This document shows positions 5,259 through 24,021 of a stretch of DNA of 64,000 nucleotides, piece after piece; position 1 is the first letter of the stretch, and each line of letters begins with the position of its first letter. The notes beneath the pieces are model-generated. The model was not told the DNA's origin, made no database searches, and was given only the letters and a program-made list of their open reading frames with translations. The stretch spans positions 372,001 through 436,000 of IMG/VR virus record IMGVR_UViG_3300024239_000011; one strand, 5' to 3'. Both the position numbers and the translations under genes were made by a program.

Positions 5259-5706
5259 CTTGTGATTTTTCCACTCTTAATGACTTGGGAATATAGTATT
5301 CCCGATGATCAACCTCATGGACATCCGTCTTGTCATTCGACCATCCCGAAACAATAAATCCATCACGAGATACAACATAGGTAAAATCATGAATAGCACT
5401 GAAATGATGCACCCTCACCACCAGTTTTTGAATAATACCGGTTTGATTGCGACTAAACTTGTCAAGTAACTCATGTACTTCAACAAGAGTGGCATTTTTA
5501 CCAGTCAAATCTCGCTTCGTCGGGGTGGGAATAAAATCTCCATTCTGAATTAATCTACGATCCTCAAGAAGCTGTTCAACACCATGATAGGTTACCCCCA
5601 ATTCATCGGGAAGTTGTTGAAAAAAATTAGTAGCCATTGTGACAATGTTTTCTGGCAACCATAATCCGACGTGATAGCGCCGAACAGTCTTCTTTCGAGA
5701 TTTCAT
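5248..5706 (-). CDS. Hypothetical phage protein (possibly a small RNase-like alpha/beta fold)
   Basis: 152-aa ORF with ATGA overlap to RNase H; YH...TYH...DR...KLVVR...WxNxxxDxH pattern. Confidence 0.6.
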   Translation of the reverse strand: MKSRKKTVRRYHVGLWLPENIVTMATNFFQQLPDELGVTYHGVEQLLEDRRLIQNGDFIPTPTKRDLTGKNATLVEVHELLDKFSRNQTGIIQKLVVRVHHFSAIHDFTYVVSRDGFIVSGWSNDKTDVHEVDHREYYIPKSLRVEKSQDEN

Positions 5707-6674
5707 GCGCGATAGCCCGCAGCAAACATATCAGTAAACTCCGCTGATCCTTTTGAGATCATGTCCAAACTCCATTTACCACAGAATTTGAGAAAATGGG
5801 TACCGATTTGTGCTCGCTGATGGGGCTGTTTCGCCTCTTCGATTATTGCATCCATGAGTTGTTTTATTTCGACGGGCTGAGCATTAAGGTCAATCAACTC
5901 ACGGTTACGCTCATAATCCTTTTTAACACGATGGGTTTTCTTCTCATGATCCTCCCACTCGTGATTCATCACGTTGTTCCACGAGAACCCTTTACGGTGT
6001 CGGTCCTCGTATGCTTCCTGAAGCACCGTTGTACGCACGCCAGGATATGCCGAAAAAACATTATCCGAGGTATCTCCCCGAATGCATTTTTCAAATAAAA
6101 TCCATTCGGGGTCTGGTGGGCGAACCGGCTCCTTCGATTTTTTGTCCATTACCGGTTCGCCCTTGTCATCAAAGAACCCATCAAGGGAAATGGTTTCCTG
6201 CTTCATGCCGTCATAGATTTGAACGTTCTTCGCCAGAAGTTGGCGGAAGTCAGTATCCGAAGAAACGATGATATGCTCAGCCTCCGGGTGTTGTCGTATC
6301 CACCCGGCTACGAGGTCATCCGCTTCAAGGATATCACACTTCAGTACCGTCACATTAGTACGGTCGCGCACGAAATCCGTCAGTGCCTCAAGAGCATTGT
6401 AAAACACTTTGTCTTCTGCTCGTTCCTCAGGGGTTTTAGCAGAATCCTTTTCCGCGCGATTTGCCTTGTAGGGGGCATAAATTTCTTTACGCCAGCTACG
6501 CCCATCCAAGGCAATTACAAGATGAACAGTACCAAACATACGCCACGCTTTACGAACACTGTTCAGGATCAAATGTAATGCCATGCTCCCTTTTTCCGAT
6601 GGGTCATTCGCCTTGATGACGTGACGGCAGCGGTGGAACATGTTATTCAGGTCAACAAGCAGGTACTTAGCCAT
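5703..6674 (-). CDS. rnh: T4-like RNase H / 5'-3' flap exonuclease
   Basis: LLVD, ALDG.SWRK, YKANR, EADD, SSDTD and RGDTSDN motifs. Confidence 0.9.
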   Translation of the reverse strand: MAKYLLVDLNNMFHRCRHVIKANDPSEKGSMALHLILNSVRKAWRMFGTVHLVIALDGRSWRKEIYAPYKANRAEKDSAKTPEERAEDKVFYNALEALTDFVRDRTNVTVLKCDILEADDLVAGWIRQHPEAEHIIVSSDTDFRQLLAKNVQIYDGMKQETISLDGFFDDKGEPVMDKKSKEPVRPPDPEWILFEKCIRGDTSDNVFSAYPGVRTTVLQEAYEDRHRKGFSWNNVMNHEWEDHEKKTHRVKKDYERNRELIDLNAQPVEIKQLMDAIIEEAKQPHQRAQIGTHFLKFCGKWSLDMISKGSAEFTDMFAAGYRA

Positions 6675-7615: not shown

Positions 7616-8359
7616 TTATTGGTTCTTTTTGGATGGAAGGATGTAGTTGTAGACCGCCAAACCAGATTCGATGGCGATCTGAAGGGCACCTTTGTCGGTA
7701 ATGCTCATAGTGCAATCCGCACCATCACTCAGACGAAGAATCTGAAGTGTTTGAGAAATTGGGAATGCCAGCGGGGCACGCAACGTACCCAGAACACCCT
7801 TCTCAAAAACCATAGTACCCTTGTGGCTGGCAGCTTCGGGATCACCGAAGAAAATCACCAAATCACCGTCAACCGTATTGATCTGGAAATGGGTTTCCTG
7901 GCTGGAATACATACCCGCACGCTGGGCAAATTCCTTTATCATTGACTTTGTGGGTGCGATTTCCACGTTCCACGAAGCACCAAGGAACTTCGGCTGTTCC
8001 GGGATGACTTCTTTCGCCATCAGGCGATAATGATCTTTTGAACCCGCTTCGTCCTTGAAAATAATCTCTTCAGCAATGTTTTCACCACCACGATCACGAT
8101 ACTTCACCGAAACGGTAGCACCATCGGTCTTGTAATTCGGAAATTCAACCAATTGCTTGAGCAAGCCAAGATTAGTCAGACCGAAAACCCCTTTTAAATC
8201 CGCAAGCGGATCAATCAAGTGTCCCTTGATAATAACAGACTTATCAGAAGCCAAAGATTCGATTTCAGTTGCAGTATCACTACCAATGACCTTGACTATT
8301 TCGATGAAGCCAAGAGCGCCGCCAGTATGTTTCACGATGTCACGGAGTTCATTACGCAT
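7616..8359 (-). CDS. Probable DNA polymerase sliding clamp (gp45-like)
   Basis: 247 aa, beta-rich two-domain pattern, FGLTNL and terminal YNYILP; lies between the polymerase and RNase H. Confidence 0.6.
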   Translation of the reverse strand: MRNELRDIVKHTGGALGFIEIVKVIGSDTATEIESLASDKSVIIKGHLIDPLADLKGVFGLTNLGLLKQLVEFPNYKTDGATVSVKYRDRGGENIAEEIIFKDEAGSKDHYRLMAKEVIPEQPKFLGASWNVEIAPTKSMIKEFAQRAGMYSSQETHFQINTVDGDLVIFFGDPEAASHKGTMVFEKGVLGTLRAPLAFPISQTLQILRLSDGADCTMSITDKGALQIAIESGLAVYNYILPSKKNQ

Positions 8360-8485: not shown

Positions 8486-8860
8486 TCATTTCACGGCATC
8501 CCCGTATTTGATCTGAAGCTCTTCAAGAAGTTTCCGCTCCGCTTCTTCACTTGCGAGTTTCTTTTTGGCTTTACGCGCCAATGCTTTCATTTCACGATCT
8601 TTGCGTGCTTTTTCTTCTTTACGTTTCTCAGCAAGTATCCACTCTTTATACTGCTCTACGGTCTCACATATGAACTTATTCGGGTCTACGGGTGTCTCAA
8701 TAACAATAAAATCGTATTTGTGGCTCGCTTGTTTGAGTAGTTGAAAAGTTTCGTCATCAACTTCAGCAAAATCCGTGAACTTTGTTATGATCCATGGTTC
8801 ATAAGCATCATCATAACCATACCCAGCGGATTGCCCCAAAATTATTGCTACTTTATGCAT
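8486..8860 (-). CDS. Hypothetical protein with charged coiled-coil C-terminus
   Basis: ORF with SD GAGG upstream of MHKVA. Confidence 0.6.
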   Translation of the reverse strand: MHKVAIILGQSAGYGYDDAYEPWIITKFTDFAEVDDETFQLLKQASHKYDFIVIETPVDPNKFICETVEQYKEWILAEKRKEEKARKDREMKALARKAKKKLASEEAERKLLEELQIKYGDAVK

Positions 8861-8870
8861 GTGATGTGCC

Positions 8871-10565
8871 TCAAAATGAGAATAGGTCAGTATCAAGCTC
8901 GACCTTAGGTTTCTTTCTACTACCAGCAGACTTGGTTCCCGCAGCGATTACCGATTGTGCATTTTTCGCAACTACGAACATGTCTTCGAAAGTCGTATTG
9001 TTACTAATACGAGACAAATCCCACTGAAGAATGCCAATCAGATTGTCAATCTTCACGTCGATCATCGAGTTTTCCATTTTCTCGTGATCGAATGGCATCT
9101 TCTTAAACCAATCAGGTAGATTATGTTCCGGTACATCTACCGGGCGGGCAATACTTTCAATTCCGTAGGGATTACTTTTCAACTGACAAACCACCACCTT
9201 GTCACCATCCTTAATCGGCGGTGTGGCATGGTCAGTCATGATTTCAAGCATGTTGTTGAAGTTGATCGCGGCGCGAACGTGACCGGGCATGTTGACCTTA
9301 CCGGTCTTGATGTCGATTTCACAATCTTCGTCGTCTTCGAAATTGATATCATCAACCTCAAGTTCTTCCAGCTTGTTGCCGTACTTGGTTAACCCCTTGA
9401 TGGCGGTGGGACGACCTTTCTGCCAACCGGGACGCGCTTGGAACTTTTCACGGAAATCGCGGACGTAATCGATCACTTCGTCTTCCGGGATACCCTTCAG
9501 AACCTTGATCAGCACCTCTTCAAGGAAGTCCTGCACAAACGCCGGGGTGTCCGAACGCTTGGTTTCAAGACCCATCGCCTTCAGCTTGCCGGGCTTGCCG
9601 TCCACGTCATACCGCTTGCCTTCGTTGTCGATGACCAGCGCGGCATACCGCTTCTTCTTGATGTACATGGCGTTTTCCGCCACGATTTCACGACCAGCCG
9701 CAATGATCGCGCCGCGCTCAAGACCAGTATTGAACGTCCGATCCATGAACTCAGGGAAGGACTCGTTGGTCACATCTGCGATGTCGTCGTACAGCTTGAT
9801 GATGGCGTCCTTGTCGGTCCAATCGAAGGTCGGCGCCATGCCACCGAACTTACCACCGAACACCCCGGTACCGCCGTCCCCAAGCGTGGTGACGGTTTCC
9901 ACGATGGGCGGGAATGCCTTCTCAAGCTTCGCGGTGAATTCGTTTTCCCATGCTTCGATATCGGCATCTTCGCCGCATTCACGGATTTCATCTTCACTGA
10001 GCGCCATTTGAAGTACATCTGTCTGCTCAGCGGTCAACTCCTTGAGAACCGCAATGATCGCATTGTCATCGCCGGATTCAGTCGCCTTGTGGAACTTCCC
10101 AAAGATTTCACCAAGCTGTTCTTCGGACGAAATCACGTTGGTTTTCGGGGTCGCTTTAGTCCAAGCGTTGTAAACGCTGAAATACGCGGAGTCGGTATCA
10201 CCATAAATCATCGCCGGTCCCAAGTGATTGTAGTCACCCGTGACCAATTCGTTGATCTTGCCCATCATGTGACGCACGATACAGCGACCCGTCAGGGTAA
10301 CAGACTGCCCGATCCGAGGATCGAACCAACGCGACCCTTCGTTCAAGATGCAACCATACAACGAGTTAAGCTTAATCTTTGCAATCAATTGTTGCATATC
10401 CCAGTATTCGTACTGGTCCATGTAATACTGCTTATTTGCAGGGAGAATATGTCCATCTTTGAAGATCAGATCATACTCGATCATATAAGCCTTGAGGGCT
10501 TCAACATCACGCGCCGATACCAAACCCTTTAGATGGTCCAAGCTATATTCTTTTACTTCGGACAA
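8871..10565 (-). CDS. Family B DNA polymerase, C-terminal subunit (second fingers helix, palm, thumb)
   Basis: Motif B KIKLNSLYG, motif C YGDTDS, KKKRYA, KAMGLETKRSDTP; TTG start. Confidence 0.95.
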   Translation of the reverse strand: MSEVKEYSLDHLKGLVSARDVEALKAYMIEYDLIFKDGHILPANKQYYMDQYEYWDMQQLIAKIKLNSLYGCILNEGSRWFDPRIGQSVTLTGRCIVRHMMGKINELVTGDYNHLGPAMIYGDTDSAYFSVYNAWTKATPKTNVISSEEQLGEIFGKFHKATESGDDNAIIAVLKELTAEQTDVLQMALSEDEIRECGEDADIEAWENEFTAKLEKAFPPIVETVTTLGDGGTGVFGGKFGGMAPTFDWTDKDAIIKLYDDIADVTNESFPEFMDRTFNTGLERGAIIAAGREIVAENAMYIKKKRYAALVIDNEGKRYDVDGKPGKLKAMGLETKRSDTPAFVQDFLEEVLIKVLKGIPEDEVIDYVRDFREKFQARPGWQKGRPTAIKGLTKYGNKLEELEVDDINFEDDEDCEIDIKTGKVNMPGHVRAAINFNNMLEIMTDHATPPIKDGDKVVVCQLKSNPYGIESIARPVDVPEHNLPDWFKKMPFDHEKMENSMIDVKIDNLIGILQWDLSRISNNTTFEDMFVVAKNAQSVIAAGTKSAGSRKKPKVELDTDLFSF

Positions 10566-10620
10566 CTCTTTTTCCCTCAGACTAAATAACTACAGGATCA
10601 TTCCAAATGAGAGGTGTCAC

Positions 10621-11607
10621 GTGGAAACCACGGTAGCTTGTATGATTTGCGGAGAGAGGCATAAGCGAATCACTCGTACTCATCTCAAAAAGCATGATAT
10701 GACGACCGATCAGTACAAAGCAATTTTCCCGGATGCCCCTATTGTGAGCGAAGAACTCTCGTATAAACTTGGCGAATATGGTCGTAGTGACGACTGCCAT
10801 AATAGAAAAGAAGAATACCGCAAGATGGTCGGAGATAATCAGCGCGGACGAAAGCGTTCGGATATTACGCGCCAACGAATCTCTGAAGCACGAACTGGTG
10901 TATCTTGGGGATCGCATACCGAAGAACACAAAGAATACATGCGCGAAGTGATGCGCGAAGATGCGAAACGGCGCCTAGCAGAAGGCATTTGGCCGCCTGT
11001 CCAAACCCCAGAAGGGAGAAAACGGAACTCCGAACGCATGAAGCAAAAATGGGCAAACGGGGATTTCAACCATTTACAACAAGTAACTCGTACAAATTGG
11101 GAAAACGGAGTGTTTGCGAATGTTTGGACAGAAGAACTACGTGCCAAACAATCTGCGAACCGCGTCCGGTACCTTAAAGAGAACCCAACCAAGAAAACCG
11201 ATACCGGGCTTGAATTAAACTTCAAAGCGTTTCTCGAACAGCACGGGATCGCGTATGAGCATCAATACATCGTTGATGACACTCGGTCGGGGCAATGGCT
11301 GTTCGATTTCTACATCCCGTCCCTCAATCTACTGGTCGAAGTCGATGGGGAATACTACCACACAATCAGCCTGCGGCAGATCAACCGGGATAAGCGCAAG
11401 CAGAACTGTGCATGGAAACGTGGATACCATTTCTTGCGTATTTCCGACAAAGACTGGCGCCCCGAATTGGTATTCGAGACGCCAGATGCCTGGAAGGAAC
11501 ATAGCATTGCTTTAGTGGATCACCGCCGGAACGACCAGTTGATCGAAGTGCGCGTGGCTGCTGTACCATCCGATGCCGAGTTGGCAAGCGACTTATTCAG
11601 TTGGTGA
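10621..11607 (+). CDS. Free-standing homing-endonuclease-like protein: Ros/MucR-like zinc finger + NUMOD3 + DUF559/Vsr-like PD-(D/E)XK nuclease
   Basis: CMIC...HLKKH, HTEEHKE and RQRISEA NUMOD3 motifs, FDFYIP...VEVDGEYYH; GTG start after GAGGT; CTAAATA at 10582. Confidence 0.8.
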   Translation: METTVACMICGERHKRITRTHLKKHDMTTDQYKAIFPDAPIVSEELSYKLGEYGRSDDCHNRKEEYRKMVGDNQRGRKRSDITRQRISEARTGVSWGSHTEEHKEYMREVMREDAKRRLAEGIWPPVQTPEGRKRNSERMKQKWANGDFNHLQQVTRTNWENGVFANVWTEELRAKQSANRVRYLKENPTKKTDTGLELNFKAFLEQHGIAYEHQYIVDDTRSGQWLFDFYIPSLNLLVEVDGEYYHTISLRQINRDKRKQNCAWKRGYHFLRISDKDWRPELVFETPDAWKEHSIALVDHRRNDQLIEVRVAAVPSDAELASDLFSW

Positions 11608-11631
11608 CCAACCACAGTTTCTCGTCAACAT

Positions 11632-11787
11632 TTACTCGATCATGTCCAGTAAAGCCTCTGCGATTTCTGTGGCTTTACTAGCCGATACTTGATAGCAAAC
11701 ACCCTCAATCACGAGCATGGCACCTTCATCGGAGCCAACAACGACCGGGACCACTGTTTCAAAGAGTTCATCATCCCATGTGTTCAT
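11632..11787 (-). CDS. Small hypothetical protein (51 aa, below ORF-track cutoff)
   Basis: Manual translation MNTWDDELFETVVPVVVGSDEGAMLVIEGVCYQVSASKATEIAEALLDMIE. Confidence 0.5.
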   Translation of the reverse strand: MNTWDDELFETVVPVVVGSDEGAMLVIEGVCYQVSASKATEIAEALLDMIE

Positions 11788-11806
11788 AATTCGACCCGGA
11801 GCAACG

Positions 11807-11835
11807 ATGGCGTCATGATCAAATCATGACGCCAT
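11807..11835. repeat. 13-bp inverted repeat
   Basis: atggcgtcatgat-caa-atcatgacgccat, just past the pentapeptide gene stop. Confidence 0.65.
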
Positions 11836-11840
11836 TGCGT

Positions 11841-12122
11841 TTAGTAACGATCAGTACCAGTAGTTCCGGCACTATTTACGGTGTTCTGCGTCGGCTCCAT
11901 AAGCTTTGCAATGTTAACACCGTTTATCACCAGACCAGTTATATCGACATTTTCAAATACCGCATGGCTCAGATCAACATCGTTGAAATTTGCCCCGGCG
12001 AGTGAAACATCGATAAACTCTGCGTCTCGCATGTTAGCGTCTTGGAAGCGGGCACTAACAAAATTTGCCCCGCAAATAATTGCCCGGTTTGGTTGATCGC
12101 TATCAGTTGTACGCTTTGGCAT
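11841..12122 (-). CDS. Pentapeptide repeat protein
   Basis: ANFVS ARFQD ANMRD AEFID VSLAG ANFND VDLSH AVFEN VDITG. Confidence 0.85.
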   Translation of the reverse strand: MPKRTTDSDQPNRAIICGANFVSARFQDANMRDAEFIDVSLAGANFNDVDLSHAVFENVDITGLVINGVNIAKLMEPTQNTVNSAGTTGTDRY

Positions 12123-12640
12123 TACGCCCTCCATTCACTGTTGTGATTAACAAAAGAATAATTTCTGTACAAATAAAGTGCAAATATGTTGCAAGACGCG
12201 CCAAGGACATCACCACACATCCCGGCATATGAATTTTCTGAGAAATTGTAGTAGAACCAAAAAGGTGCTGATAGCAAATTGAACAGTCTCAGTGTTTGTG
12301 GGTTTGTACTAAAACTGGCGTAAGTATTGAGTATAGATGCAATCCCGACCATCACGTTAGGCACCGTTACCGCAGTGGCACCGATCATGATGACAGGCAA
12401 AATGTAGAATATCGATTTGACATATGCATTATTGGTATTCAACGCAACTATACCTCTTACCCCAGCAATCCCATCTATGATAGCTCCGGAATATGCGTCC
12501 AACAGAAAGTAATGGACTACGTAACATCCAATACCGATAGTCCCCGCCATAATGATATGGCGTGTTGTCTTCCAAAAGGTCGATGTGACGCCAACAATTA
12601 AACCAACAAAACCAATGAGTTGAGCTACCGTTTCGAACAT
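12122..12640 (-). CDS. YgjV-like multi-pass inner membrane protein
   Basis: AQLIG...HYFLLDAYSGA...R...LR...WFYYN pattern, hydrophobic. Confidence 0.7.
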   Translation of the reverse strand: MFETVAQLIGFVGLIVGVTSTFWKTTRHIIMAGTIGIGCYVVHYFLLDAYSGAIIDGIAGVRGIVALNTNNAYVKSIFYILPVIMIGATAVTVPNVMVGIASILNTYASFSTNPQTLRLFNLLSAPFWFYYNFSENSYAGMCGDVLGASCNIFALYLYRNYSFVNHNSEWRA

Positions 12641-13071
12641 GGCACACGTTCCCAATGGTTCCACGGGTCATCCCAACTTGCGATATTGAACCCGTACACG
12701 GTCGCCAAGTGTTCGGATTGTGCATGTCCAGGGCGGATCGAAACCGTAAGAATCTTATCTGCATACAGGGTTAGGCGATGTTGCCACAGCAAATGTGCAA
12801 GCCTTTTTCCACGATGTGAGGGAAGAATGATCCCACCAAGCAAATGGGTCGAAGGCATGTCATACGGATAACATCCATTGACAATAACGCTACACCAGCC
12901 GACAACGGTTTCTTCTTCTTTCAACCACCATGATTTGATTGGTCCATACTGACAGTTCGTAATTTCTGCTGTCGTATACCAATCACCATCATGCATATTC
13001 TCGGACGCCAGTTGCTCATAGTAAGGCAAATCACGTTCCGTAAGTTCATGAAAACTATACTTCATTGGCAT
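12625..13071 (-). CDS. GNAT-family acetyltransferase
   Basis: ILPSHRGKRLA acetyl-CoA motif A; terminal ATVYGF. Confidence 0.75.
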   Translation of the reverse strand: MPMKYSFHELTERDLPYYEQLASENMHDGDWYTTAEITNCQYGPIKSWWLKEEETVVGWCSVIVNGCYPYDMPSTHLLGGIILPSHRGKRLAHLLWQHRLTLYADKILTVSIRPGHAQSEHLATVYGFNIASWDDPWNHWERVPCSKR

Positions 13072-13597
13072 TTTCTATTGATGAATAGTGGTCAGAGACG
13101 ACCGTGAATTCTATAGTGGGTGTCATGCCATCTTTCGGACAAGCAGCCTGATACTCTTTGATCCAGCACCCGACGAAATTAGCCCAATCCATCGACCGAT
13201 CTTCCTCGGCAGACCCAATGATCATGTCAAATTTGCATGCGGAAAAAGAGGTGGTGCGCATGGCGTCGCGCATTCGGTCAACCTGTTCCATCGCCCACCG
13301 GCACCCATCCGACCCATACGAAAAACCAACCGTGATCGTGGTGGTGCGACGAACAGGTACGTCACAACTCAAGGTGTTGTATAACAGGGGGACCGTCTTG
13401 CTCTTAGGCGTTGGTTTAAAACTCAACCACGCCTTCAGTTTTTCCCAGATGGTGGGTTTGACTTCTCGTGAGGTCGGTAAGACAATGCTTTGTTGACGGG
13501 TTTCGCACTGAATGGACGGTCCCCCCGTACACCAGAACTGCTGATCGCCAATCTTGACGTAATTTTTGACCATGATTGGGTTGGGCAAATCCATCAT
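13055..13597 (-). CDS. Hypothetical protein with possible divergent tail-tube (gp19-like) C-terminus
   Basis: KFDMII...FVGCW...PTIEFTVVSD resembles recalled tail-tube C-termini. Confidence 0.4.
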   Translation of the reverse strand: MMDLPNPIMVKNYVKIGDQQFWCTGGPSIQCETRQQSIVLPTSREVKPTIWEKLKAWLSFKPTPKSKTVPLLYNTLSCDVPVRRTTTITVGFSYGSDGCRWAMEQVDRMRDAMRTTSFSACKFDMIIGSAEEDRSMDWANFVGCWIKEYQAACPKDGMTPTIEFTVVSDHYSSIENANEV

Positions 13598-13863
13598 CAG
13601 TCCTCACGCGGGTCCACGGGCGGACGTGGCATCGGCATCCAAACAGTCGGATTGTACTGGGTTCCACCCAGGTAATCGTTCAACGCATCATCAGATTCGA
13701 AAACGCCTTCCGGATCGAACGATACCCATTGATCACGGAACCATTGTCCGCAGCACGGCTCGTAGGCGACGTAGCTGCCGTCAGGGAGATACCCAGCAAC
13801 ACACAGAATGATACGAGTGCCGTCTTTTGGTGCTGTTGATATGTCTTGCCACATGAACATCAA
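13597..13863 (-). CDS. DUF551-like phage protein
   Basis: WQDISTAPKDGT...PTVWMPMP. Confidence 0.8.
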   Translation of the reverse strand: MMFMWQDISTAPKDGTRIILCVAGYLPDGSYVAYEPCCGQWFRDQWVSFDPEGVFESDDALNDYLGGTQYNPTVWMPMPRPPVDPRED

Positions 13864-14090
13864 TACTTTCCTACGATGGCTCGGATCGCCCCAAGATAAT
13901 CTGATGATCGAAGATTGCGCAACGCTTCACGCAATTTCTGATCGGCAGCCGCCCAACGTGCCGCAGATTCACGGCACAATTGTTCAAATGCCCGTTGCGA
14001 GTGAACTATTTCGTCAAACGACGGAACGAAAGGGTCTTTGGGTAGCAGCTTCATTTCATCACCTATCTGATGGGTCGTAAGCCCGTACAT
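13860..14090 (-). CDS. Hypothetical protein
   Basis: Coupled ORF in the small-gene run; start uncertain. Confidence 0.5.
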   Translation of the reverse strand: MYGLTTHQIGDEMKLLPKDPFVPSFDEIVHSQRAFEQLCRESAARWAAADQKLREALRNLRSSDYLGAIRAIVGKY

Positions 14091-14166
14091 CAGCAGTTTT
14101 CGCCCCAGGTATCTTCCCGAGGTTCGGCTTGATGCGCCAGTTCGCGCAGCGTTTCGAGCGGGATGG

Positions 14167-14514
14167 TCATGGGTTTCCTTTCTGTCTGGTTAATCGACGC
14201 TCATCACAATCTTTACGCCATTTCTGCAACCGTGCAGTCACAACCGGATCGAGACTTGCCAATAATTCCTCACCTTCGTTGCAATAATGGTAATAAAGCG
14301 GCTGCCATTCGTCATCGTCAGTTAATCCGTAATGTCGATTGAGCTTAATTTCGGCATCGCGACATTCAAGGTGATGGCGTAAAACATAAACGTCCCCGTC
14401 ATAAACGCCTCTGTATTCACTGTATGCTTGACCGAGTGTAATCATGGTTTGGCATCCCTGACACCGATGCTCTTTCCGAGCGGTGCGGGTTTGTTCCGTC
14501 AGACAAACCATCAC
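14167..14514 (-). CDS. Hypothetical phage protein with zinc-binding motif
   Basis: ARKEHRCQGC...HLEC; GTGA overlap with the upstream gene. Confidence 0.65.
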   Translation of the reverse strand: MMVCLTEQTRTARKEHRCQGCQTMITLGQAYSEYRGVYDGDVYVLRHHLECRDAEIKLNRHYGLTDDDEWQPLYYHYCNEGEELLASLDPVVTARLQKWRKDCDERRLTRQKGNP

Positions 14515-14732
14515 GTTTCCTCGCTCGCATACATGCGGTGGCTTTCTGCATGCCCTTTGATCCAATTTCGAAGTCGTTGGAGACGAACCACCGCCCGCAA
14601 ATATTCGTTTTTGTCAATCATGATGTGGTCTAGTCCTGGCTCAGATGGTTCATACGTCCCACCAACCAATGCCTGCATGACTTCATCAATCGACACTGCG
14701 AACCGGTCAAAATCATTTTCGTTTGAATACAT
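14511..14732 (-). CDS. Hypothetical protein
   Basis: ORF in a coupled run; start at MYSNE after GGGGG. Confidence 0.55.
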   Translation of the reverse strand: MYSNENDFDRFAVSIDEVMQALVGGTYEPSEPGLDHIMIDKNEYLRAVVRLQRLRNWIKGHAESHRMYASEET

Positions 14733-14736
14733 GACA

Positions 14737-15009
14737 TCATCCCCCATTCTCGGTAACACCACGTCGGGTGCCCGTACCTTGTTTGAATTCCTGCGACATA
14801 GCGAAGATCAAATCCGCCTTCCTCTTTTCTAGGAAGTCCATCACCTCGGCATGGGTCAGGCTTACGATAGGTGTGGAGAATTGGTCACCATCGCTATCGC
14901 GCCCGCTTGCCATCACAGTAAACCCGCTACGGGAATGCGATTTGGCCTTTCCAAGCGCGGCTTCCACATCGCTGAGTTTCTTCGCCAATTCCACTATAAT
15001 TTGGCTCAC
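14737..15009 (-). CDS. Hypothetical protein
   Basis: GTGA-coupled 90-aa ORF. Confidence 0.55.
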   Translation of the reverse strand: MSQIIVELAKKLSDVEAALGKAKSHSRSGFTVMASGRDSDGDQFSTPIVSLTHAEVMDFLEKRKADLIFAMSQEFKQGTGTRRGVTENGG

Positions 15010-15269
15010 CGTTTCGACTCCTTCTTGATCTTGAACCCTTTGAACACGGGCGGGATCACGGTGGGCGTGCTGCTGATACGGCCACCAGAGTAATGGTCGC
15101 CGCTGTTGTCCAGGCGACCACCTTCAATGATTACTTCAAGGTCATCTGCCACAACGTGGATGTTGTGTTCTTCCATGAGATAATCCGCAACGATCTCGCG
15201 GATGTCCTTCTCGTTGATAGTCACCGTGAGGACTTCGGTGATACTGATACCGGATACTTTCTTGTCCAT
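15006..15269 (-). CDS. Hypothetical protein
   Basis: 87-aa ORF with GC3-rich codons. Confidence 0.6.
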   Translation of the reverse strand: MDKKVSGISITEVLTVTINEKDIREIVADYLMEEHNIHVVADDLEVIIEGGRLDNSGDHYSGGRISSTPTVIPPVFKGFKIKKESKR

Positions 15270-15322
15270 TGACGCTCACCATCTTGAGTAGTATGGTATG
15301 ACTGTTACAGGGAGTACCGACG

Positions 15323-15490
15323 ATGCATACGATCCAACGCATTACCGATATGCTTCAACAAGAGCATGACGGCTACACAATCAACTATTCGGTTCTGCAT
15401 GATCTGGCATCACACGCATTGCCCGAGAACCCCGATCTCAAACACACCCTGGTCAGCGTGATCAATCGCTGTAGGCGTATTTTGAAGTAG
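15323..15490 (+). CDS. Small hypothetical protein (55 aa) with its own sigma70-like promoter
   Basis: MHTIQRITDMLQQEHDGYTINYSVLHDLASHALPENPDLKHTLVSVINRCRRILK; SD GGGAG; TTGACG-N17-TATGGT at 15269-15297. Confidence 0.6.
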   Translation: MHTIQRITDMLQQEHDGYTINYSVLHDLASHALPENPDLKHTLVSVINRCRRILK

Positions 15491-15625
15491 CCGGGCTTCC
15501 ACCGGTCCCCGACACTTAATCACTGGCATACTTCATCAGCCAGCCCCGCTGTCGTCACGTCCGTACCCGGTCCCCGTCTACGTGGTCGGCGTTGGTACGG
15601 AACAGTCTGTCCACCTCGGTGTGCG

Positions 15626-16309
15626 TTAGTAGTCGTAGCGGTTGGGGTGCGTTTCTTCGAGATATTCGGTATCCACAATGACACGGGTTTTTGCAGCGTG
15701 CATGAAGAACATGTCACGCTCGAACCCATAGAGGTTGCCCATGAACAGGTCTTTCTTCACGTCAGTACCACGAAGCGTCACCGAGAACAATTTACCATCC
15801 TCACCAATACCAAGCTGAATAGCGCAGCTATACTTGGTAGTGTTGGAATCCTTGTCTAAGTAGAGCCAATACGATCTGTATTGGCTTTTTTCAAGTATGG
15901 CAGTGACGGCATCGTCGCAAGCTTCGTTGTCGCTGCGAACCCATTCCTTGAACTTCTCGACCAACTCGGACAACTTAATCACCTCCGGGGCGCTAGTCCC
16001 CAATAGGTTCTCAAGGTCTTTCTCAAGTTGCTGGGCACCCATCGTTTCGATCAAGGCACCCAGTTTTCGTTGGACAATACCGAGAACGATATTATTGTAA
16101 CCGGGCAACCCAAGCTGACTTAAATCGACCTTAAGCGTTTCCTGAATCGCTTTTTCAAGATTTCGACCGAACTCAGAGTATGAGCGCAAAGCGTTTTCAA
16201 CAATGTCCTCGACCGTTTTTTCGATCTTGGTTTGTATCATTGTTTCAAGTTTACCGCTTTCTGATAGATGGCGTATTGATTGCAACACCACGTCTTCGAA
16301 CTGTTTCAT
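15626..16309 (-). CDS. Conserved phage hypothetical protein
   Basis: ALRSYSEFG...LGLPGYN...IKLSELV pattern; ATGA-coupled start MKQFE. Confidence 0.7.
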   Translation of the reverse strand: MKQFEDVVLQSIRHLSESGKLETMIQTKIEKTVEDIVENALRSYSEFGRNLEKAIQETLKVDLSQLGLPGYNNIVLGIVQRKLGALIETMGAQQLEKDLENLLGTSAPEVIKLSELVEKFKEWVRSDNEACDDAVTAILEKSQYRSYWLYLDKDSNTTKYSCAIQLGIGEDGKLFSVTLRGTDVKKDLFMGNLYGFERDMFFMHAAKTRVIVDTEYLEETHPNRYDY

Positions 16310-16608
16310 TTGTTTTTCTCGTAGTAATGGTCGTGAAGCTGACAATTGTTGATGACCATGCCTTCTTCGAACCAGTTGTTTCCGTTTTCTTGATTGTAAG
16401 CCTTATCTTCCGGGTGTGGTGATAGGCAGATATCCAAGGCAGGCAAAGGAAGAGTATTGCCATCAACGATGTTCAGAATAGAAAACGCTACGCCATCGCA
16501 CCGCTCCTTGGGCGATTTGTCGGGCAAATTTGCCCAGAAATCAGCAATCCCCCGGATGTGGCGAAGGAATATGTCCCGGACTTCTTCAGCCGTATATGCA
16601 CGCGACAT
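16306..16608 (-). CDS. Conserved phage hypothetical protein
   Basis: RAYTAEEVR...ERCDGVAFSILNIVDG...LP...PHPEDK. Confidence 0.7.
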   Translation of the reverse strand: MSRAYTAEEVRDIFLRHIRGIADFWANLPDKSPKERCDGVAFSILNIVDGNTLPLPALDICLSPHPEDKAYNQENGNNWFEEGMVINNCQLHDHYYEKNK

Positions 16609-16609
16609 A

Positions 16610-16996
16610 TCAGTGATCCTTTATGTGCGTGTCATACGCGCTTTGATCCATAAGACGGTCCAACTCTTCCGGTGCCGTGATCCGCAGCTTGACGAACCAT
16701 CCTGCATCCATTGGCGAGATGTTGATCAATGAGGTGTCTGTGATCAGCGCATTATTGACCTCAACTACCTCACCGGAAAGCGGTGCAAACACATCACTGG
16801 CAGCTTTAACCGACTCGACTACGGCTAAATCCATCCCTCTAGAAACAGTTTTCCCGACCTCTGGGAGGTCAACAAACACAATGTCACCGAGTGCATGTTG
16901 CGCATAATTAGTGATGCCCACGGTGGCAATGTCGCCCTCCACGGAAACCCATTCATGTTCGGAGGTGAACTTGATCATTTCGTTTGAAAATCCCAC
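16610..16996 (-). CDS. gcvH: Glycine cleavage system H protein (lipoyl carrier)
   Basis: HEW, VGITNYAQ..LGDIVFV, VESVKAASD with the lipoyl-Lys, N.SP...GW. Confidence 0.95.
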   Translation of the reverse strand: MGFSNEMIKFTSEHEWVSVEGDIATVGITNYAQHALGDIVFVDLPEVGKTVSRGMDLAVVESVKAASDVFAPLSGEVVEVNNALITDTSLINISPMDAGWFVKLRITAPEELDRLMDQSAYDTHIKDH

Positions 16997-17080
16997 ATGA
17001 TTCGATTACTAGGTATTCTATTGGTCATGCAGAGACATCCGCAATTTTTATATGCTGCTGATAAAAAGGACAGTATTCTA

Positions 17081-17428
17081 ATGGCTTTTGAGTACCGGAT
17101 CGTATCGGAGCAAGAATTCCGAACCAAACTGATAGAAGCACTGAAGAATTGCCCGGCTAAATCGGTCACTGGACCGGGCAGAAGCGGTGCAATTGCTGCT
17201 GCCTATACCAGCCACCTTTTGGACATACCGTTTGTCCCTTATGGTCGAAAAGTTGGACCCGACCTCCAACCGCTCTTAATTGTGGATACCGCGCTGTATT
17301 CTGGTTCCACCATGCGGAAAGCCGAGAAGCAATATCAGGGCGCCCATTTAATCAAGCGGTGGCTGTATGCAGAACCGCCGATGGTGCGGTTCTGGTACGA
17401 ATTCCCATTCGATACGGCATCCGCATAA
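17081..17428 (+). CDS. Minimal type I phosphoribosyltransferase-like protein
   Basis: GPGRSG pyrophosphate loop; LLIVDTALYSGSTM PRPP-binding loop. Confidence 0.65.
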   Translation: MAFEYRIVSEQEFRTKLIEALKNCPAKSVTGPGRSGAIAAAYTSHLLDIPFVPYGRKVGPDLQPLLIVDTALYSGSTMRKAEKQYQGAHLIKRWLYAEPPMVRFWYEFPFDTASA

Positions 17429-17481
17429 GGAAAGGGCGCCCTTCTCATCGGTAGTCACTAGGACACATTGCATCGATCAAT

Positions 17482-19113
17482 TCATGCCGCCAACATCTTA
17501 CCCAGGTCTTGGTCAATTTCGACACCCACTGCCATCTTGAAGTAGGTACCGGACTTCTTCTTCATCGACTTACGGTCGGCATACCACCGAGCCAACAAAC
17601 CCGGAATAACGCCTTCAATATCGGTACGAAAGATGGTGCCGTTGGCAGACAAGCAGAGGTTGCTCCCCTCGGCAAAAATCCACTCGTAGATTTCCTTTGC
17701 GGTCATTTCGTCCGAACGGGACATGGGTACCCCATTCTTGTCGAAATCAACGGTTAAGGTCACATCGCTCTGCTTCATAACCTCTTGGAATTCGACCGAG
17801 CCGAACATTTCATGCCATGCGTCCGTTGGACTCATACCGTCCGCGATACGTTGGTCAATGAGACGGCGCGTCATGGTCTGGCGAATTTGCCCAACCACGG
17901 TTTCCGGGGACATGTTCAATGCGCGAATGCACGACGGGTACAGCGAGTTAATGTCGCAGGCACCTACCCAGCGGTGTAGACCGGTAATAGGGTCACGAAC
18001 GTAAGCGCCCGCCGCCTTGCCTTCCTGCCGAAACCCACGCTTATCAAAGACAATGAAACCGCGCTCATGCGCCTCGTTCACAATGGCTTGGTCGATGATC
18101 GCCACCGAACCCATTGTCGCCTTGAAATCCACACAGATCGAGTGCGCAAGCTGATTGTGAAGCTCGATGAACTTCTTCTTGCGGTCAATCTTCACCAGCA
18201 GCATGGTATCCTGCCGGTTATAGGCGATGAACTTGTTGAAGTCCTTGTTATACAAATCGTGCAGCGACCCTTCGTAAGGGGTCTTGTTCTCATTCACCTC
18301 AAGCTCGCCCACGAAGTCCAGCTTGTAGCTATGAAGCTCCTGATAGGTGTTCTTCTTGTACAGTTCGAGATAGTCAAGGTGTGCCTTACCAACAGTGTCG
18401 AAGGTAAAGACTGTCTTGTTGAACTGCTCGTACTCGCGGCGTACCGGTTCTTTGTCCCACAAACACATACCCTTGGTGTATTCATCACCAAGCGCCTTCT
18501 TGATGCGCAGAACCATGTAGGGAATATCGAAGCCCGTCGAGTTCCAGCCGGTAAATACGTCAACGTCCTCAACGACTTTGAGAAACATTTCCAACATGTC
18601 CCGTTCATTCTTGAACAGGTAGGTGTTGTCAAATTCCGCAACCGCTTCCTTGGCCTCGTCCCATGTCATGGTCTTGGGCGGGACCGCAAGCGTGATCATC
18701 GTGTCAGCCCAACTCAGGTAGACCGAGATCGCATTTACCGGTGCGTAGGGGTTCTCTGGGTTTGAAAAACCGATATCCGGGGAATAATCAACTTCGATAT
18801 CCAGGCATCCTAAATTCAATACCGGTGTCGGTTTTCCGTGATAATGTTCGTATAAAGTATTGAACAATACATTGGTATCGCTTTCAAAAAGGGACTGACC
18901 ATCAAGTTCCTGTTTTTTTGCATAAAACTTGCTTCGATTATTTGTCTCAAATTTTGATAGACGTTCTCCAAAAATGGAGTTGTAGTCACCATTTTTATCA
19001 CGGTAGTAAAGCCTATATGACGGCTCTATCTTGCGTTCTACTCGTTTTCCTGCAACACGTTCAGAAACAAGAATCTTGTCCTCATCTCGATCAAGTATGG
19101 CATCAACATACAT
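17482..19113 (-). CDS. Family B DNA polymerase, N-terminal subunit (N-domain, 3'-5' exonuclease, motif A, first fingers helix)
   Basis: ExoI LDIE, ExoII WNSTGFDIPY, ExoIII YNRQD, motif A DINSLYPS, G.IPGLL..WY..RK. Confidence 0.95.
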   Translation of the reverse strand: MYVDAILDRDEDKILVSERVAGKRVERKIEPSYRLYYRDKNGDYNSIFGERLSKFETNNRSKFYAKKQELDGQSLFESDTNVLFNTLYEHYHGKPTPVLNLGCLDIEVDYSPDIGFSNPENPYAPVNAISVYLSWADTMITLAVPPKTMTWDEAKEAVAEFDNTYLFKNERDMLEMFLKVVEDVDVFTGWNSTGFDIPYMVLRIKKALGDEYTKGMCLWDKEPVRREYEQFNKTVFTFDTVGKAHLDYLELYKKNTYQELHSYKLDFVGELEVNENKTPYEGSLHDLYNKDFNKFIAYNRQDTMLLVKIDRKKKFIELHNQLAHSICVDFKATMGSVAIIDQAIVNEAHERGFIVFDKRGFRQEGKAAGAYVRDPITGLHRWVGACDINSLYPSCIRALNMSPETVVGQIRQTMTRRLIDQRIADGMSPTDAWHEMFGSVEFQEVMKQSDVTLTVDFDKNGVPMSRSDEMTAKEIYEWIFAEGSNLCLSANGTIFRTDIEGVIPGLLARWYADRKSMKKKSGTYFKMAVGVEIDQDLGKMLAA

Positions 19114-19126
19114 ATAAACACCTCGG

Positions 19127-19408
19127 TTAAACTAGCGAGCGGAACAAACCAAGAACATTGATCGCAGCAAAAACCACGTTCAATGCCATAATAAAAGCAT
19201 TATTTCTCATGATTGCCGACGTAATCAAACATACGTTACTCACGAGAAAAATGGTGTATAAAAGCTGGAAGGGAGTCGCCTGCTGATAGATTGCCATCAA
19301 GACTGCACCCGCCATTCCGGCGATGGTACCGACAACTTCAATCAGCAATGCGACTCGCTTATTAGCCCAGTCGTCCATGATCTGTGAAAAGAGGTTCGGA
19401 CGATCCAC
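19127..19408 (-). CDS. Small 3-TM membrane protein
   Basis: Three hydrophobic segments; terminal INVLGL. Confidence 0.65.
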   Translation of the reverse strand: MDRPNLFSQIMDDWANKRVALLIEVVGTIAGMAGAVLMAIYQQATPFQLLYTIFLVSNVCLITSAIMRNNAFIMALNVVFAAINVLGLFRSLV

Positions 19409-19413
19409 TGGAT

Positions 19414-19704
19414 TTACTCAGCGGAACCGGCCATGGCTTCATCAAGATAGCCAGCACGATGTAGAAGCTGCTCGACCACACCGATCTTGTCCTGCTCATC
19501 ACCAAGCGAACGCTTATGGGCAACGGCAAGCGCCTTCGACAGATCGGCAGGCTTCACGTCCAGCTTCTCAGCCAGGGACTTGGTAGCCTCCTTCAGACCT
19601 TCCTTCATATAAGCAATGTCGTTAAGGGTCTGAATACCTTCCTTGATGAAGGACTCCAGTTCAGGATCGTGGTTGCCGGGGGTAACGGTGGCGTCATCAG
19701 CCAT
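19414..19704 (-). CDS. T4 DsbA / GapR-like double-stranded DNA-binding protein
   Basis: Helical L..FIKEG...I...KE.LKE....AEKLDVKP..L.KA..VAHK pattern; next to the polymerase; TTGACC-N18-TAAGAT at 19763-19792. Confidence 0.6.
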   Translation of the reverse strand: MADDATVTPGNHDPELESFIKEGIQTLNDIAYMKEGLKEATKSLAEKLDVKPADLSKALAVAHKRSLGDEQDKIGVVEQLLHRAGYLDEAMAGSAE

Positions 19705-23932: not shown

Positions 23933-24021
23933 ATTGATGCTCCAACGAATCATTTGACCGCATCTTAACGTCAAAAATTAAATTGTCAATGGGAAGAACA
24001 ATAAATATAATATAAGAAACT

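What the first reader, a model, noticed from the sequence alone, without database searches (positions are those of the whole stretch)
8871..19113. Family B DNA polymerase split at the fingers tip into two genes about 7 kb apart
Seen: 17482-19113 carries the exonuclease, motif A and the first fingers helix (WYADRK). 8871-10565 starts before motif B (KIKLNSLYG) and carries motif C. About 16 unrelated small genes lie between them. No intein motifs or intron-like sequence are visible at either junction. Established: some Aeromonas T4-like phages have gp43 split into 43A/43B in the fingers, and Aeh1 nrdA was split by a homing endonuclease. Inference: a heterodimeric polymerase whose active-site aspartates come from two chains. 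The endonuclease beside the C-half may have caused the split, and the gap then filled with accessory genes.
Basis: partly seen in the sequence, partly recalled or inferred. Interest (0 to 1): 0.7.

Follow-up and report, generated by a model that had tools for sequence, protein, structure and literature searches.

The report
Two-gene DNA polymerase in huge phage
A 543-kb phage encodes its replicative family B DNA polymerase as two separate genes, cut at the tip of the fingers domain and pushed 6.9 kb apart by a homing endonuclease and about 16 small genes; this kind of split is already known from T4-like phages and turns out to be common among jumbo phages.

Summary
17482-19113(-) encodes the exonuclease domain, motif A and the first fingers helix. 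8871-10565(-) encodes the second fingers helix (motif B), motif C and the thumb. The two match complementary parts of Pfam PF00136, and no other PolB or PolA is in the 543-kb genome. The break maps between RB69 gp43 residues ~486 and ~555. Neither junction has an intein, intron or excision joint. The C-half has its own ribosome-binding site and TTG start. Contigs from four runs confirm the layout.

The outer flanks match those of intact polymerase genes in relatives, and none of the intervening ORFs occurs there, so the 6,916 bp is an insertion. A Vsr/DUF559-like homing endonuclease (10621-11607, +) abuts the C-half start. A complex model passes (0.83; best control 0.00).

The split is not unique. 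Aeromonas phage 25 gp43A/43B breaks at the same site. At least 35 homolog clusters end there too, scattered over the tree, mostly with adjacent halves where the context could be read. One run carries a second allele of the endonuclease region, with synonymous recoding next to motif B.

Most likely this is a non-covalent two-subunit polymerase. Whether this endonuclease caused the split is unresolved.

The parts
17482..19113 (-). PolB N-half (543 aa): N-terminal domain, 3'-5' exonuclease (Exo I D105/E107, Exo II N191/D196, Exo III Y298/D302), palm motif A (D387, SLYP 390-393) and first fingers helix (W510, R514). It ends 33 residues after WYADRK at a TGA stop.
8871..10565 (-). PolB C-half (564 aa): second half of the fingers-tip insertion, second fingers helix with motif B (K63, N67, Y70, G71), palm motif C (D123 T124 D125 S126), KKRY (304-307) and thumb. 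It has its own RBS (GAGGG, 8 nt spacer) and TTG start, with an in-frame TAG 8 codons upstream. A lineage-specific insertion of about 110 aa lies at residues ~133-246.
10566..17481 (.). 6,916-bp block between the halves. None of its ORFs has a homolog near polB in about 90 relatives. Its composition equals that of the genome (GC 0.487; tetranucleotide distance at the 10th percentile).
10621..11607 (+). Free-standing homing-endonuclease-like gene (328 aa from GTG 10621; the ORF opens at 10492). It has a Ros/MucR-type zinc finger, NUMOD3 and a Vsr/DUF559/MTES_1575-like nuclease. It is divergent from the C-half start, 55 bp away.
10428..11523 (.). Polymorphic segment. In run X3 a second allele (depth 56 against 32) replaces these 1,096 bp with 1,135 other bases, and X4 diverges at the same point. 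The first 30 alternative bases are 70% identical at DNA level but encode 9 of 10 identical residues (C-half codons 37-46).
10329..10337 (-). C-half codons 77-79 (G-S-R, just after motif B), fully recoded synonymously in the X3/X4 haplotype (GGG>GGA, TCG>AGT, CGT>AGA). Codon 59 also changes CAA>CAG. This is a candidate endonuclease target/immunity site or a co-conversion tract.
11841..12134 (-). Pentapeptide-repeat protein (97 aa) inside the block.
12122..12664 (-). YgjV-family inner-membrane protein (180 aa) inside the block.
12625..13071 (-). GNAT acetyltransferase-like protein (148 aa) inside the block.
15626..16345 (-). Phage protein of unknown function, phrog_2600 (239 aa), inside the block.
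16610..16996 (-). Glycine-cleavage H-protein (lipoyl carrier) homolog (128 aa) inside the block.
16997..17428 (+). Hypothetical phage protein (143 aa), convergent with the N-half stop. No nuclease signature; a weak phosphoribosyltransferase-like fold lead only.
19414..19704 (-). Upstream synteny anchor: a DsbA-like small DNA-binding protein found upstream of polB (usually within 1.5 kb) in 75 of about 90 relatives' loci.
7616..8359 (-). Downstream synteny anchor: a 247-aa protein (phrog_12062; annotated as sliding clamp in phage Phosso) found downstream of polB in 71 of about 90 relatives' loci.

Best explanation
The phage's only family B replicative polymerase is made as two polypeptides. They are translated independently and assemble non-covalently.

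**How the enzyme forms.** The N-subunit supplies the exonuclease, motif A and the first fingers helix. The C-subunit supplies the second fingers helix (motif B), motif C and the thumb. The palm sheet and the fingers helical hairpin are completed across the subunit interface.

**Where the cut lies.** It sits in a clade-specific insertion at the fingers tip. This loop tolerates interruption and has been split (or re-fused) many times in jumbo-phage PolBs and in T4-like Aeromonas phages.

**What is particular here.** In this lineage the intercistronic gap has grown to 6.9 kb. It holds a free-standing homing endonuclease next to the C-half start and about 16 resident accessory genes.

**Shown:** gene structure, break site, synteny, absence of splicing signals, recurrence in relatives, and the population polymorphism.
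**Inferred:** assembly and activity of the two chains, the order of events, and activity of the endonuclease.
For: - **Complementary halves.** The Pfam and RB69 matches are complementary. All catalytic residues are invariant against relatives at 40-55% identity.
- **No alternative polymerase.** There is no second PolB and no PolA.
- **Independent translation.** The C-half has GAGGG-8nt-TTG and cannot be extended upstream. The N-half ends at a TGA, followed by TAG 8 codons on.
- **No room for a split intein.** The N tail and C head together match the intact fingers tip of Phosso/CBB almost residue for residue.
- **No joining signals.** No intein hit, no intron, no flanking repeats, and no DNA joint skipping the block in four runs.
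- **Insertion into a syntenic site.** The outer flanks are syntenic with relatives and the inner ORFs are absent from them.
- **Complex model.** N(300-543)+C scores 0.83 with best control 0.00. That mark was reached by 58 of 80 solved complexes and 2 of 110 mismatched pairs. The runs agree in >=95% of contacts and the partner's pLDDT is >=74. Motif A (380-399) contacts motif C (119-133), and fingers helix 503-542 contacts C 6-66.
- **Purifying selection on the C-half head.** Across two natural haplotypes, 9 of 10 residues are kept at 70% DNA identity, and 7 of 7 nearby substitutions are synonymous.
- **Precedents.** Phage 25 43A / endonuclease / 43B is split at the same site, and the halves co-purify and are active (PMC2988022). 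PhiKZ DNAP-N/C come from separate genes (gp82 and gp50) and form a stable 1:1 complex (PMC13648687).
- **Recurrence.** 35 cluster representatives end 28-52 aa after WYxxRK. The state needs 26 changes on the tree, at least 16 of them forced by well-supported branches.
- **Different endonucleases at the same site.** L026/L082 carry a phrog_655 endonuclease between their halves.
Against: - There is no RNA, protein or biochemical evidence for this phage; no RNA run holds it.
- The complex model may score high from memory of single-chain PolB structures, and my own alignments were used.
- The C-half uses a TTG start and lies 6.9 kb downstream of the N-half, so equal expression is not guaranteed.
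- The share of split forms among cluster representatives is inflated, because half-length proteins cannot cluster with full-length ones. Among the best 80 IMG/VR loci only 3 were split.
- The tree is a quick search, and some 'split' calls could be truncated ORFs.
- A minimal Pol III alpha-like fragment exists elsewhere in the genome, so PolB is not the only polymerase-like gene.
Confidence: 0.8

Rival explanations
1. Origin rival A: this homing endonuclease itself cut and split a contiguous polB (as mobE did in Aeh1 nrdA), and accessory genes accumulated afterwards.
For: - The endonuclease directly abuts the C-half start.
- Other endonuclease families sit at the same site in L026/L082 and in phage 25.
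- The endonuclease region is polymorphic, with synonymous recoding next to motif B.
- Endonuclease paralog fragments occur elsewhere in the genome.
Against: - Several relatives have the same split with adjacent or overlapping cistrons and no endonuclease: Atu_ph07, L010, L011/L012 and L094/L095.
- Phosso, a close relative of Atu_ph07, is intact. This shows a split can arise recently and without leaving an endonuclease behind.
- The same ambiguity was already noted for phage 25 versus 44RR (PMC2988022).
Confidence: 0.4
2. Origin rival B: the split arose first by simple mutation in the unconstrained fingers-tip loop (a stop plus a nearby start). The intercistronic gap then became a safe landing pad for the endonuclease and for successive gene insertions.
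For: - Adjacent two-cistron forms are the commonest context sampled.
- The ends of the window's halves align with those of endonuclease-free split relatives.
- The block has genome-typical composition, which suggests long residence or internal origin.
Against: - No intermediate (adjacent halves) is known in a close relative of this phage: no relative above ~55% identity was found.
- Endonuclease gain followed by deletion could equally leave adjacent cistrons.
Confidence: 0.45
3. The halves are relics of a broken polymerase gene, and replication uses another enzyme.
For: A Pol III alpha-like minimal fragment is present elsewhere in the genome.
Against: - Both halves are full-length with every catalytic residue intact.
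- Two haplotypes differ mainly at synonymous sites.
- There is no other PolB or PolA.
- Dozens of lineages keep the same two-part form.
Confidence: 0.04
4. The two parts are joined after transcription or translation (intron, trans-splicing, split intein) or by DNA excision of the block.
For: Inteins do occur in related PolBs: PA5oct/MIJ3 at another site (PMC6892783), and many metagenomic homologs have large inserts.
Against: - No intein family hits either half, and there are no spare residues at the junction.
- No Rfam intron.
- Opposite-strand genes lie inside the block.
- No recombinase, no flanking repeats, and no skipping joint in four DNA runs.
Confidence: 0.03
5. Assembly artefact: the 6.9 kb was wrongly placed between two parts of one gene.
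For: None beyond the metagenomic origin of the contig.
Against: - The X1 contig spans the whole region and the X2 contig spans both junctions, both colinear with the window. X3 and X4 contigs tile it in the same order.
- Each half ends or starts with proper stop or RBS-start signals.
Confidence: 0.01

Closest known systems
gp43A/gp43B split DNA polymerase of T4-like Aeromonas phages 25, 44RR and 31 (Petrov, Ratnayaka & Karam 2010, cited in PMC2988022)
   Same: Same enzyme family and the same break site. 43A ends about 31 residues after the first fingers helix and motif B starts 46 residues into 43B; the window's values are 33 and 62. The two cistrons are separate, a free-standing homing endonuclease lies between them in phage 25, and there is no intein.
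   Different: In phage 25 the gap is a single endonuclease gene (~0.85 kb). Here it is 6.9 kb with about 17 genes, and the endonuclease is of another family and on the opposite strand. The host genome is a 543-kb phage of the Rak2/Atu_ph07-like PolB clade, not a Straboviridae member.
Atu_ph07-type two-cistron PolB and metagenomic relatives (L010, L011/L012, L094/L095)
   Same: Closest sequence relatives (42-50% identity). Their junction lies within a few residues of the window's, inside the same clade-specific fingers-tip insertion.
   Different: Their halves are adjacent (18 nt, 10 nt or 2 nt apart, or a 4-nt overlap) with nothing in between. I found no paper that describes this split.
PhiKZ DNAP-N (gp82) / DNAP-C (gp50) (PMC13648687)
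   Same: A family B polymerase encoded by two separate genes. The motif A Asp is on one chain and the motif C Asp on the other, and a stable 1:1 active complex has been shown by cryo-EM.
   Different: The break lies in a palm insertion, so fingers and thumb are both on the C chain. It is a different phage family, and there is an extra Rhc subunit.
Intein-interrupted PolB of PA5oct/MIJ3 ('fractured gene' with split intein and HNH endonuclease; PMC6892783)
   Same: A related jumbo-phage PolB (42% identity in the N part), annotated as two polymerase genes with an endonuclease between them.
   Different: There the interruption is an intein at a downstream site and the product is presumably spliced. 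The window has no intein blocks.
Split PolB of Methanothermobacter thermautotrophicus (Kelman et al. 1999, cited in PMC7776575)
   Same: A family B polymerase made of two polypeptides from separate genes.
   Different: Archaeal, and split at another position according to my own recollection (not tested here). No endonuclease is associated.

Membership tests
Family B DNA polymerase (T4/RB69 gp43 type) | Exonuclease motifs Exo I (DxE), Exo II (Nx2-3FD), Exo III (Yx3D) | tested here: met
   D105/E107, N191/D196 and Y298/D302 are invariant in alignment A2; PF03104 scores 67 bits.
Family B DNA polymerase (T4/RB69 gp43 type) | Polymerase motifs A (DxxSLYPS), B (KxxxNSxYG), C (YGDTDS) and KKRY | tested here: met
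   Motif A is on the N-half (D387, S390-P393). Motifs B (K63, N67, Y70, G71), C (D123-S126) and KKRY (304-307) are on the C-half.
Family B DNA polymerase (T4/RB69 gp43 type) | Single polypeptide carrying all domains | tested here: not met
   Two ORFs 6,916 bp apart; no fused form in the genome or in reads.
gp43A/43B-type fingers-tip split PolB | Break between the first fingers helix and the motif B helix | tested here: met
   RB69 mapping 486 | 555; direct comparison with phage 25 43A/43B termini.
gp43A/43B-type fingers-tip split PolB | Each part has its own translation signals and there is no splicing element | tested here: met
   RBS and TTG for the C-half, TGA for the N-half, no intein or intron.
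gp43A/43B-type fingers-tip split PolB | The two polypeptides associate and are active | not testable with these tools
   Only a complex model: score 0.83 against best control 0.00.
Intein-split ('fractured') PolB | Intein splicing blocks flanking the break | tested here: not met
   No PF14890/Hint hit at E<=0.01 in either half, whereas the PA5oct halves hit it. The junction residues are accounted for by the intact relatives.
PhiKZ-type split PolB | Break inside the palm insertion, with fingers wholly on the C chain | tested here: not met
   The first fingers helix is on the N-half; the PhiKZ description is in PMC13648687.
Free-standing homing endonuclease (Vsr/DUF559-like nuclease with NUMOD3 and zinc finger) | Recognisable nuclease and DNA-binding modules | tested here: inconclusive
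   PHROG endonuclease families hit down to E 4e-15. The Pfam nuclease hits are below their curated cut-offs (MTES_1575 21.6 against 38.2; DUF559 17.2 against 20.6). ROS_MUCR is above its cut-off.
Free-standing homing endonuclease (Vsr/DUF559-like nuclease with NUMOD3 and zinc finger) | Sporadic presence beside a conserved target gene, with allele polymorphism | tested here: inconclusive
   It is absent from all relatives' polB loci. A second allele of the region exists in runs X3/X4, but its sequence could not be fetched.

The most novel reading that the evidence does not exclude
The fingers tip of this jumbo-phage PolB clade is a recurrent landing pad for unrelated homing endonucleases, and the two-subunit state is repeatedly created and fixed. 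In this phage the endonuclease is still active. On that reading, the two co-occurring haplotypes are rival endonuclease/immunity alleles: they differ by a 1.1-kb replacement plus full synonymous recoding of codons 77-79 right after motif B, which would be the cleavage site. Once opened, the gap has become a plastic region where accessory genes accumulate inside an essential gene.
Probability: 0.3. Interest if true: 0.6.

Novelty: new variant of a known kind. Interest (0 to 1): 0.45.

Why it matters
- **Annotation.** A replicative polymerase can tolerate its two halves being unlinked by many genes. Pipelines that expect one polB gene will mislabel such phages as having fragments or pseudogenes.
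- **Structure and engineering.** The recurrence of the cut at one loop across jumbo phages and T4-like phages marks the fingers tip as a natural permissive site. That is useful for split-polymerase engineering and for understanding fingers dynamics.
- **Homing-endonuclease biology.** Unrelated homing endonucleases associate with this site, and this phage carries a natural two-allele polymorphism. Together they offer a tractable case of homing-endonuclease-driven gene fragmentation in uncultivated huge phages.

Tried and rejected
- **Close relatives.** Megablast of the region against GenBank phages gave no match. Single-protein scans of viral contigs found nothing. The metagenome scan returned only the source contig. 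No relative above ~55% identity was found, so the history of the insertion cannot be traced step by step.
- **Alternative allele.** Exact-pattern scans for the 30-nt loose end found nothing in viral contigs or metagenomes, so the sequence of the 1,135-nt allele is unknown.
- **Transcription signals.** The promoter/terminator scan gave counts no higher than shuffled sequence, so no claim is made about transcription units.
- **Boundaries of the block.** The repeat search found no terminal direct or inverted repeats, and I saw no recombinase, so a mobile island or excisable element is rejected.
- **Splicing.** Rfam found no intron.
- **Endonuclease kinship.** The window's endonuclease shares only a short nuclease motif with PA5oct's intervening endonuclease (E 3e-4) and nothing with that of L026.
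- **ORF 16997-17428(+).** It was tested as a second nuclease. There is no support, only a weak phosphoribosyltransferase-like fold lead.
- **Foreign origin of the block.** Rejected on composition.

Full report
**1. What is there.**
The window is G000:C1:372001-436000 of a single 543,035-bp virus contig (Ga0247724_1000001). CheckV rates it 100% complete, and it comes from a subsurface/soil metagenome study.

ORF 17482-19113(-) encodes 543 aa. ORF 8871-10565(-) encodes 564 aa. The first hits PF03104 and PF00136 positions 14-137. The second hits PF00136 positions 147-236 and 272-346.

Against solved structures, N-half residues 101-413 and 488-518 align to RB69 gp43 110-437 and 456-486. C-half residues 58-131 and 297-475 align to RB69 555-629 and 698-849. 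The cut therefore falls between the two long fingers helices.

About 82 residues lie between the last and first RB69-aligned residues (25 on the N tail, 57 on the C head). RB69 has about 69 there.

Aligned with intact relatives (Phosso, CBB, XbC2, Vibrio phage 2.275.O), the N tail (…GVEIDQDLGKMLAA) and the C head (SEVKEYSLDHLKGL…) line up with consecutive parts of a clade-specific fingers-tip insertion. At most about ten linker residues are unaccounted for.

**2. Is it one gene in disguise? No.**
- No intein family hits either half, although the same search finds intein blocks in the PA5oct polymerase pieces.
- Rfam finds no intron between 8000 and 20000 at E<=1.
- The N-half stops at TGA, with TAG eight codons on.
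- The C-half has GAGGG, 8 nt, then TTG, and an in-frame TAG eight codons upstream of the TTG.
- The interval contains opposite-strand genes, has no flanking repeats, and I saw no recombinase.
- Contigs from four DNA runs show the same order. One contig in X1 covers 8800-19150 and one in X2 covers 8800-18593; either run may be the source sample. No joint skips the block.
- No other PolB or PolA copy exists in the genome.
- A minimal Pol III alpha-like fragment exists far away. This fits the description of group 2.2 jumbo phages (PMC7824862).

**3. The interval is an insertion.**
Two genes anchor the synteny:
- A DsbA-like 96-aa gene (19414-19704) lies upstream of the N-half.
- A 247-aa gene (7616-8359; annotated as sliding clamp in Phosso) lies downstream of the C-half.

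They flank polB in 75 and 71 of about 90 relatives' loci. Not one ORF from 10582-17428 has a homolog in those loci.

The block (6,916 bp) holds:
- a homing-endonuclease-like gene on the + strand, 55 bp from the C-half start;
- a pentapeptide-repeat protein, a YgjV-type membrane protein, a GNAT, a phrog_2600 protein and a GcvH homolog;
- about ten unknowns.

Its GC (0.487) and tetranucleotide usage are those of the genome, so it is not a fresh foreign island.

**4. Relatives.**
The nearest cultured relatives are jumbo phages (Atu_ph07, Phosso, PA5oct, CBB, GAP32, RaK2 and others) at 40-46% identity.
- CBB, XbC2, Phosso and Vibrio 2.275.O have an intact gene of ~1,000 aa.
- Atu_ph07 has two adjacent genes, 18 nt apart. 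Its junction lies within a few residues of the window's.
- PA5oct/MIJ3 are interrupted elsewhere by an intein (PMC6892783).

In an exhaustive search, 35 of 77 classifiable cluster representatives end 28-52 residues after WYxxRK; the window's N-half ends 33 after it. The sampled contexts vary:
- halves adjacent or overlapping: L010, L011/L012, L094/L095;
- one unrelated homing endonuclease (phrog_655) between them: L026/L082;
- no C-half within 5.6, 0.96 or 0.84 kb: L093, L096, L079.

On a tree of the N-parts the split state needs 26 changes. At least 16 are forced by well-supported branches, and the count is no lower than for shuffled labels.

Caveats:
- Representatives over-count split forms, because half-length proteins cluster apart from full-length ones.
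- Only 3 of the best 80 IMG/VR loci are split.
- The tree is a quick search.

**5. The known precedent.**
Aeromonas phage 25 carries 43A (498 aa), a homing endonuclease, then 43B. 43A ends about 31 residues after its fingers helix (FLQRK), and motif B starts 46 residues into 43B. This is the same structural site.

Those halves co-purify and are active, and it is unresolved whether the endonuclease caused that split (PMC2988022).

PhiKZ shows that a PolB encoded by two separate genes forms a stable, active 1:1 complex, though it is cut in the palm (PMC13648687).

**6. Does it assemble?**
A complex model of N(300-543) with the whole C-half scored 0.83, with best control 0.00.
- That mark was reached by 58 of 80 solved complexes and 2 of 110 mismatched pairs.
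- The three runs agree in >=95% of contacts, and the partner's pLDDT is >=74.
- Motif A contacts the motif C strands, and the two fingers helices pair.
- The model may partly recall single-chain PolB folds. It supports binding but does not show it.

**7. Population data.**
In run X3 two alleles coexist. The window's allele has depth 32. A second, at depth 56, replaces 10428-11523 with 1,135 other bases. That stretch covers most of the endonuclease gene and C-half codons 1-46. X4 diverges at the same base.
- The first 30 alternative bases are 70% identical in DNA but encode DGHILPKNKQ against DGHILPANKQ.
- The linked substitutions at codons 59 and 77-79 are all synonymous, including TCG>AGT and CGT>AGA.

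This shows purifying selection on the C-half head. It also shows recombination with a diverged homolog centred on the endonuclease. That fits homing with co-conversion or target-site immunity, but does not prove either.

**8. Verdict.**
The functional reading (a non-covalent two-subunit PolB) is well supported in silico and by precedent. The causal role of this endonuclease is open.

The split site and principle are already known. The new elements are:
- the 6.9-kb, ~17-gene separation in a 543-kb phage;
- the evidence that the fingers-tip split is widespread and recurrent in jumbo-phage PolBs;
- the natural two-allele polymorphism at the endonuclease.

Noticed in passing
window 22412-23974 (-): A 520-aa phage protein with WGR, PARP regulatory and PARP catalytic domains (PF05406, PF02877, PF00644, all above their cut-offs). 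A eukaryote-like poly(ADP-ribose) polymerase architecture is unusual in a phage.
   Followed up: no
window 16610-16996 (-): A glycine-cleavage H-protein (lipoyl carrier) homolog (PF01597, E 1e-43) sits inside the block that separates the polymerase halves. No partner P/T/L proteins were seen nearby.
   Followed up: no
window 9828-10169 (C-half residues ~133-246): An acidic, helical-looking insertion of about 110 aa between motif C and the KKRY region. It is absent from all relatives (tblastn matches break at residues 132 and 247). It has no Pfam or intein hit and is not part of the predicted interface.
   Followed up: partly
window 14812-15066 and 13947-15791: In run X3 a 971-nt contig carries 25 substitutions clustered in ~250 bp. 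Contigs of X3/X4 are fragmented here, whereas the N-half region is contiguous. This looks like a second microdiversity hot spot inside the block.
   Followed up: no
G000:C1:481167-481403 (-), outside the window (L098): A Pol III alpha-like fragment (PF07733, 37.7 bits) in a 194-aa frame with one in-frame TAG. It is probably the 'minimal split Pol III alpha' described for group 2.2 jumbo phages (PMC7824862).
   Followed up: no
G000:C1:189754-190263, 174294-174524, 218709-218885: Three partial paralogs of the homing endonuclease's DNA-binding or nuclease modules lie elsewhere in the genome, so this endonuclease family has several copies or remnants.
   Followed up: no
L097:3193-6675: In a JGI metagenome relative the polymerase appears in three or more pieces: a 551-aa N-half, then a 152-aa phrog_335 ORF, then a C-part whose matches fall in several frames. 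This may be a further-fragmented or decaying gene, or sequencing errors.
   Followed up: partly
L093:1281-8598: Another relative whose N-half (560 aa) is followed by 5.6 kb of unrelated ORFs with no C-half and no clamp-like gene. Wide separation or relocation of the halves is therefore not unique to the window.
   Followed up: partly
window 5703-6674 (-): A 5'-3' exonuclease (FEN/RNase H-like) homolog, conserved a few kb downstream of polB in several relatives (46% identity to L094:17172-18161, which carries PF02739). It is part of a conserved replication module.
   Followed up: no
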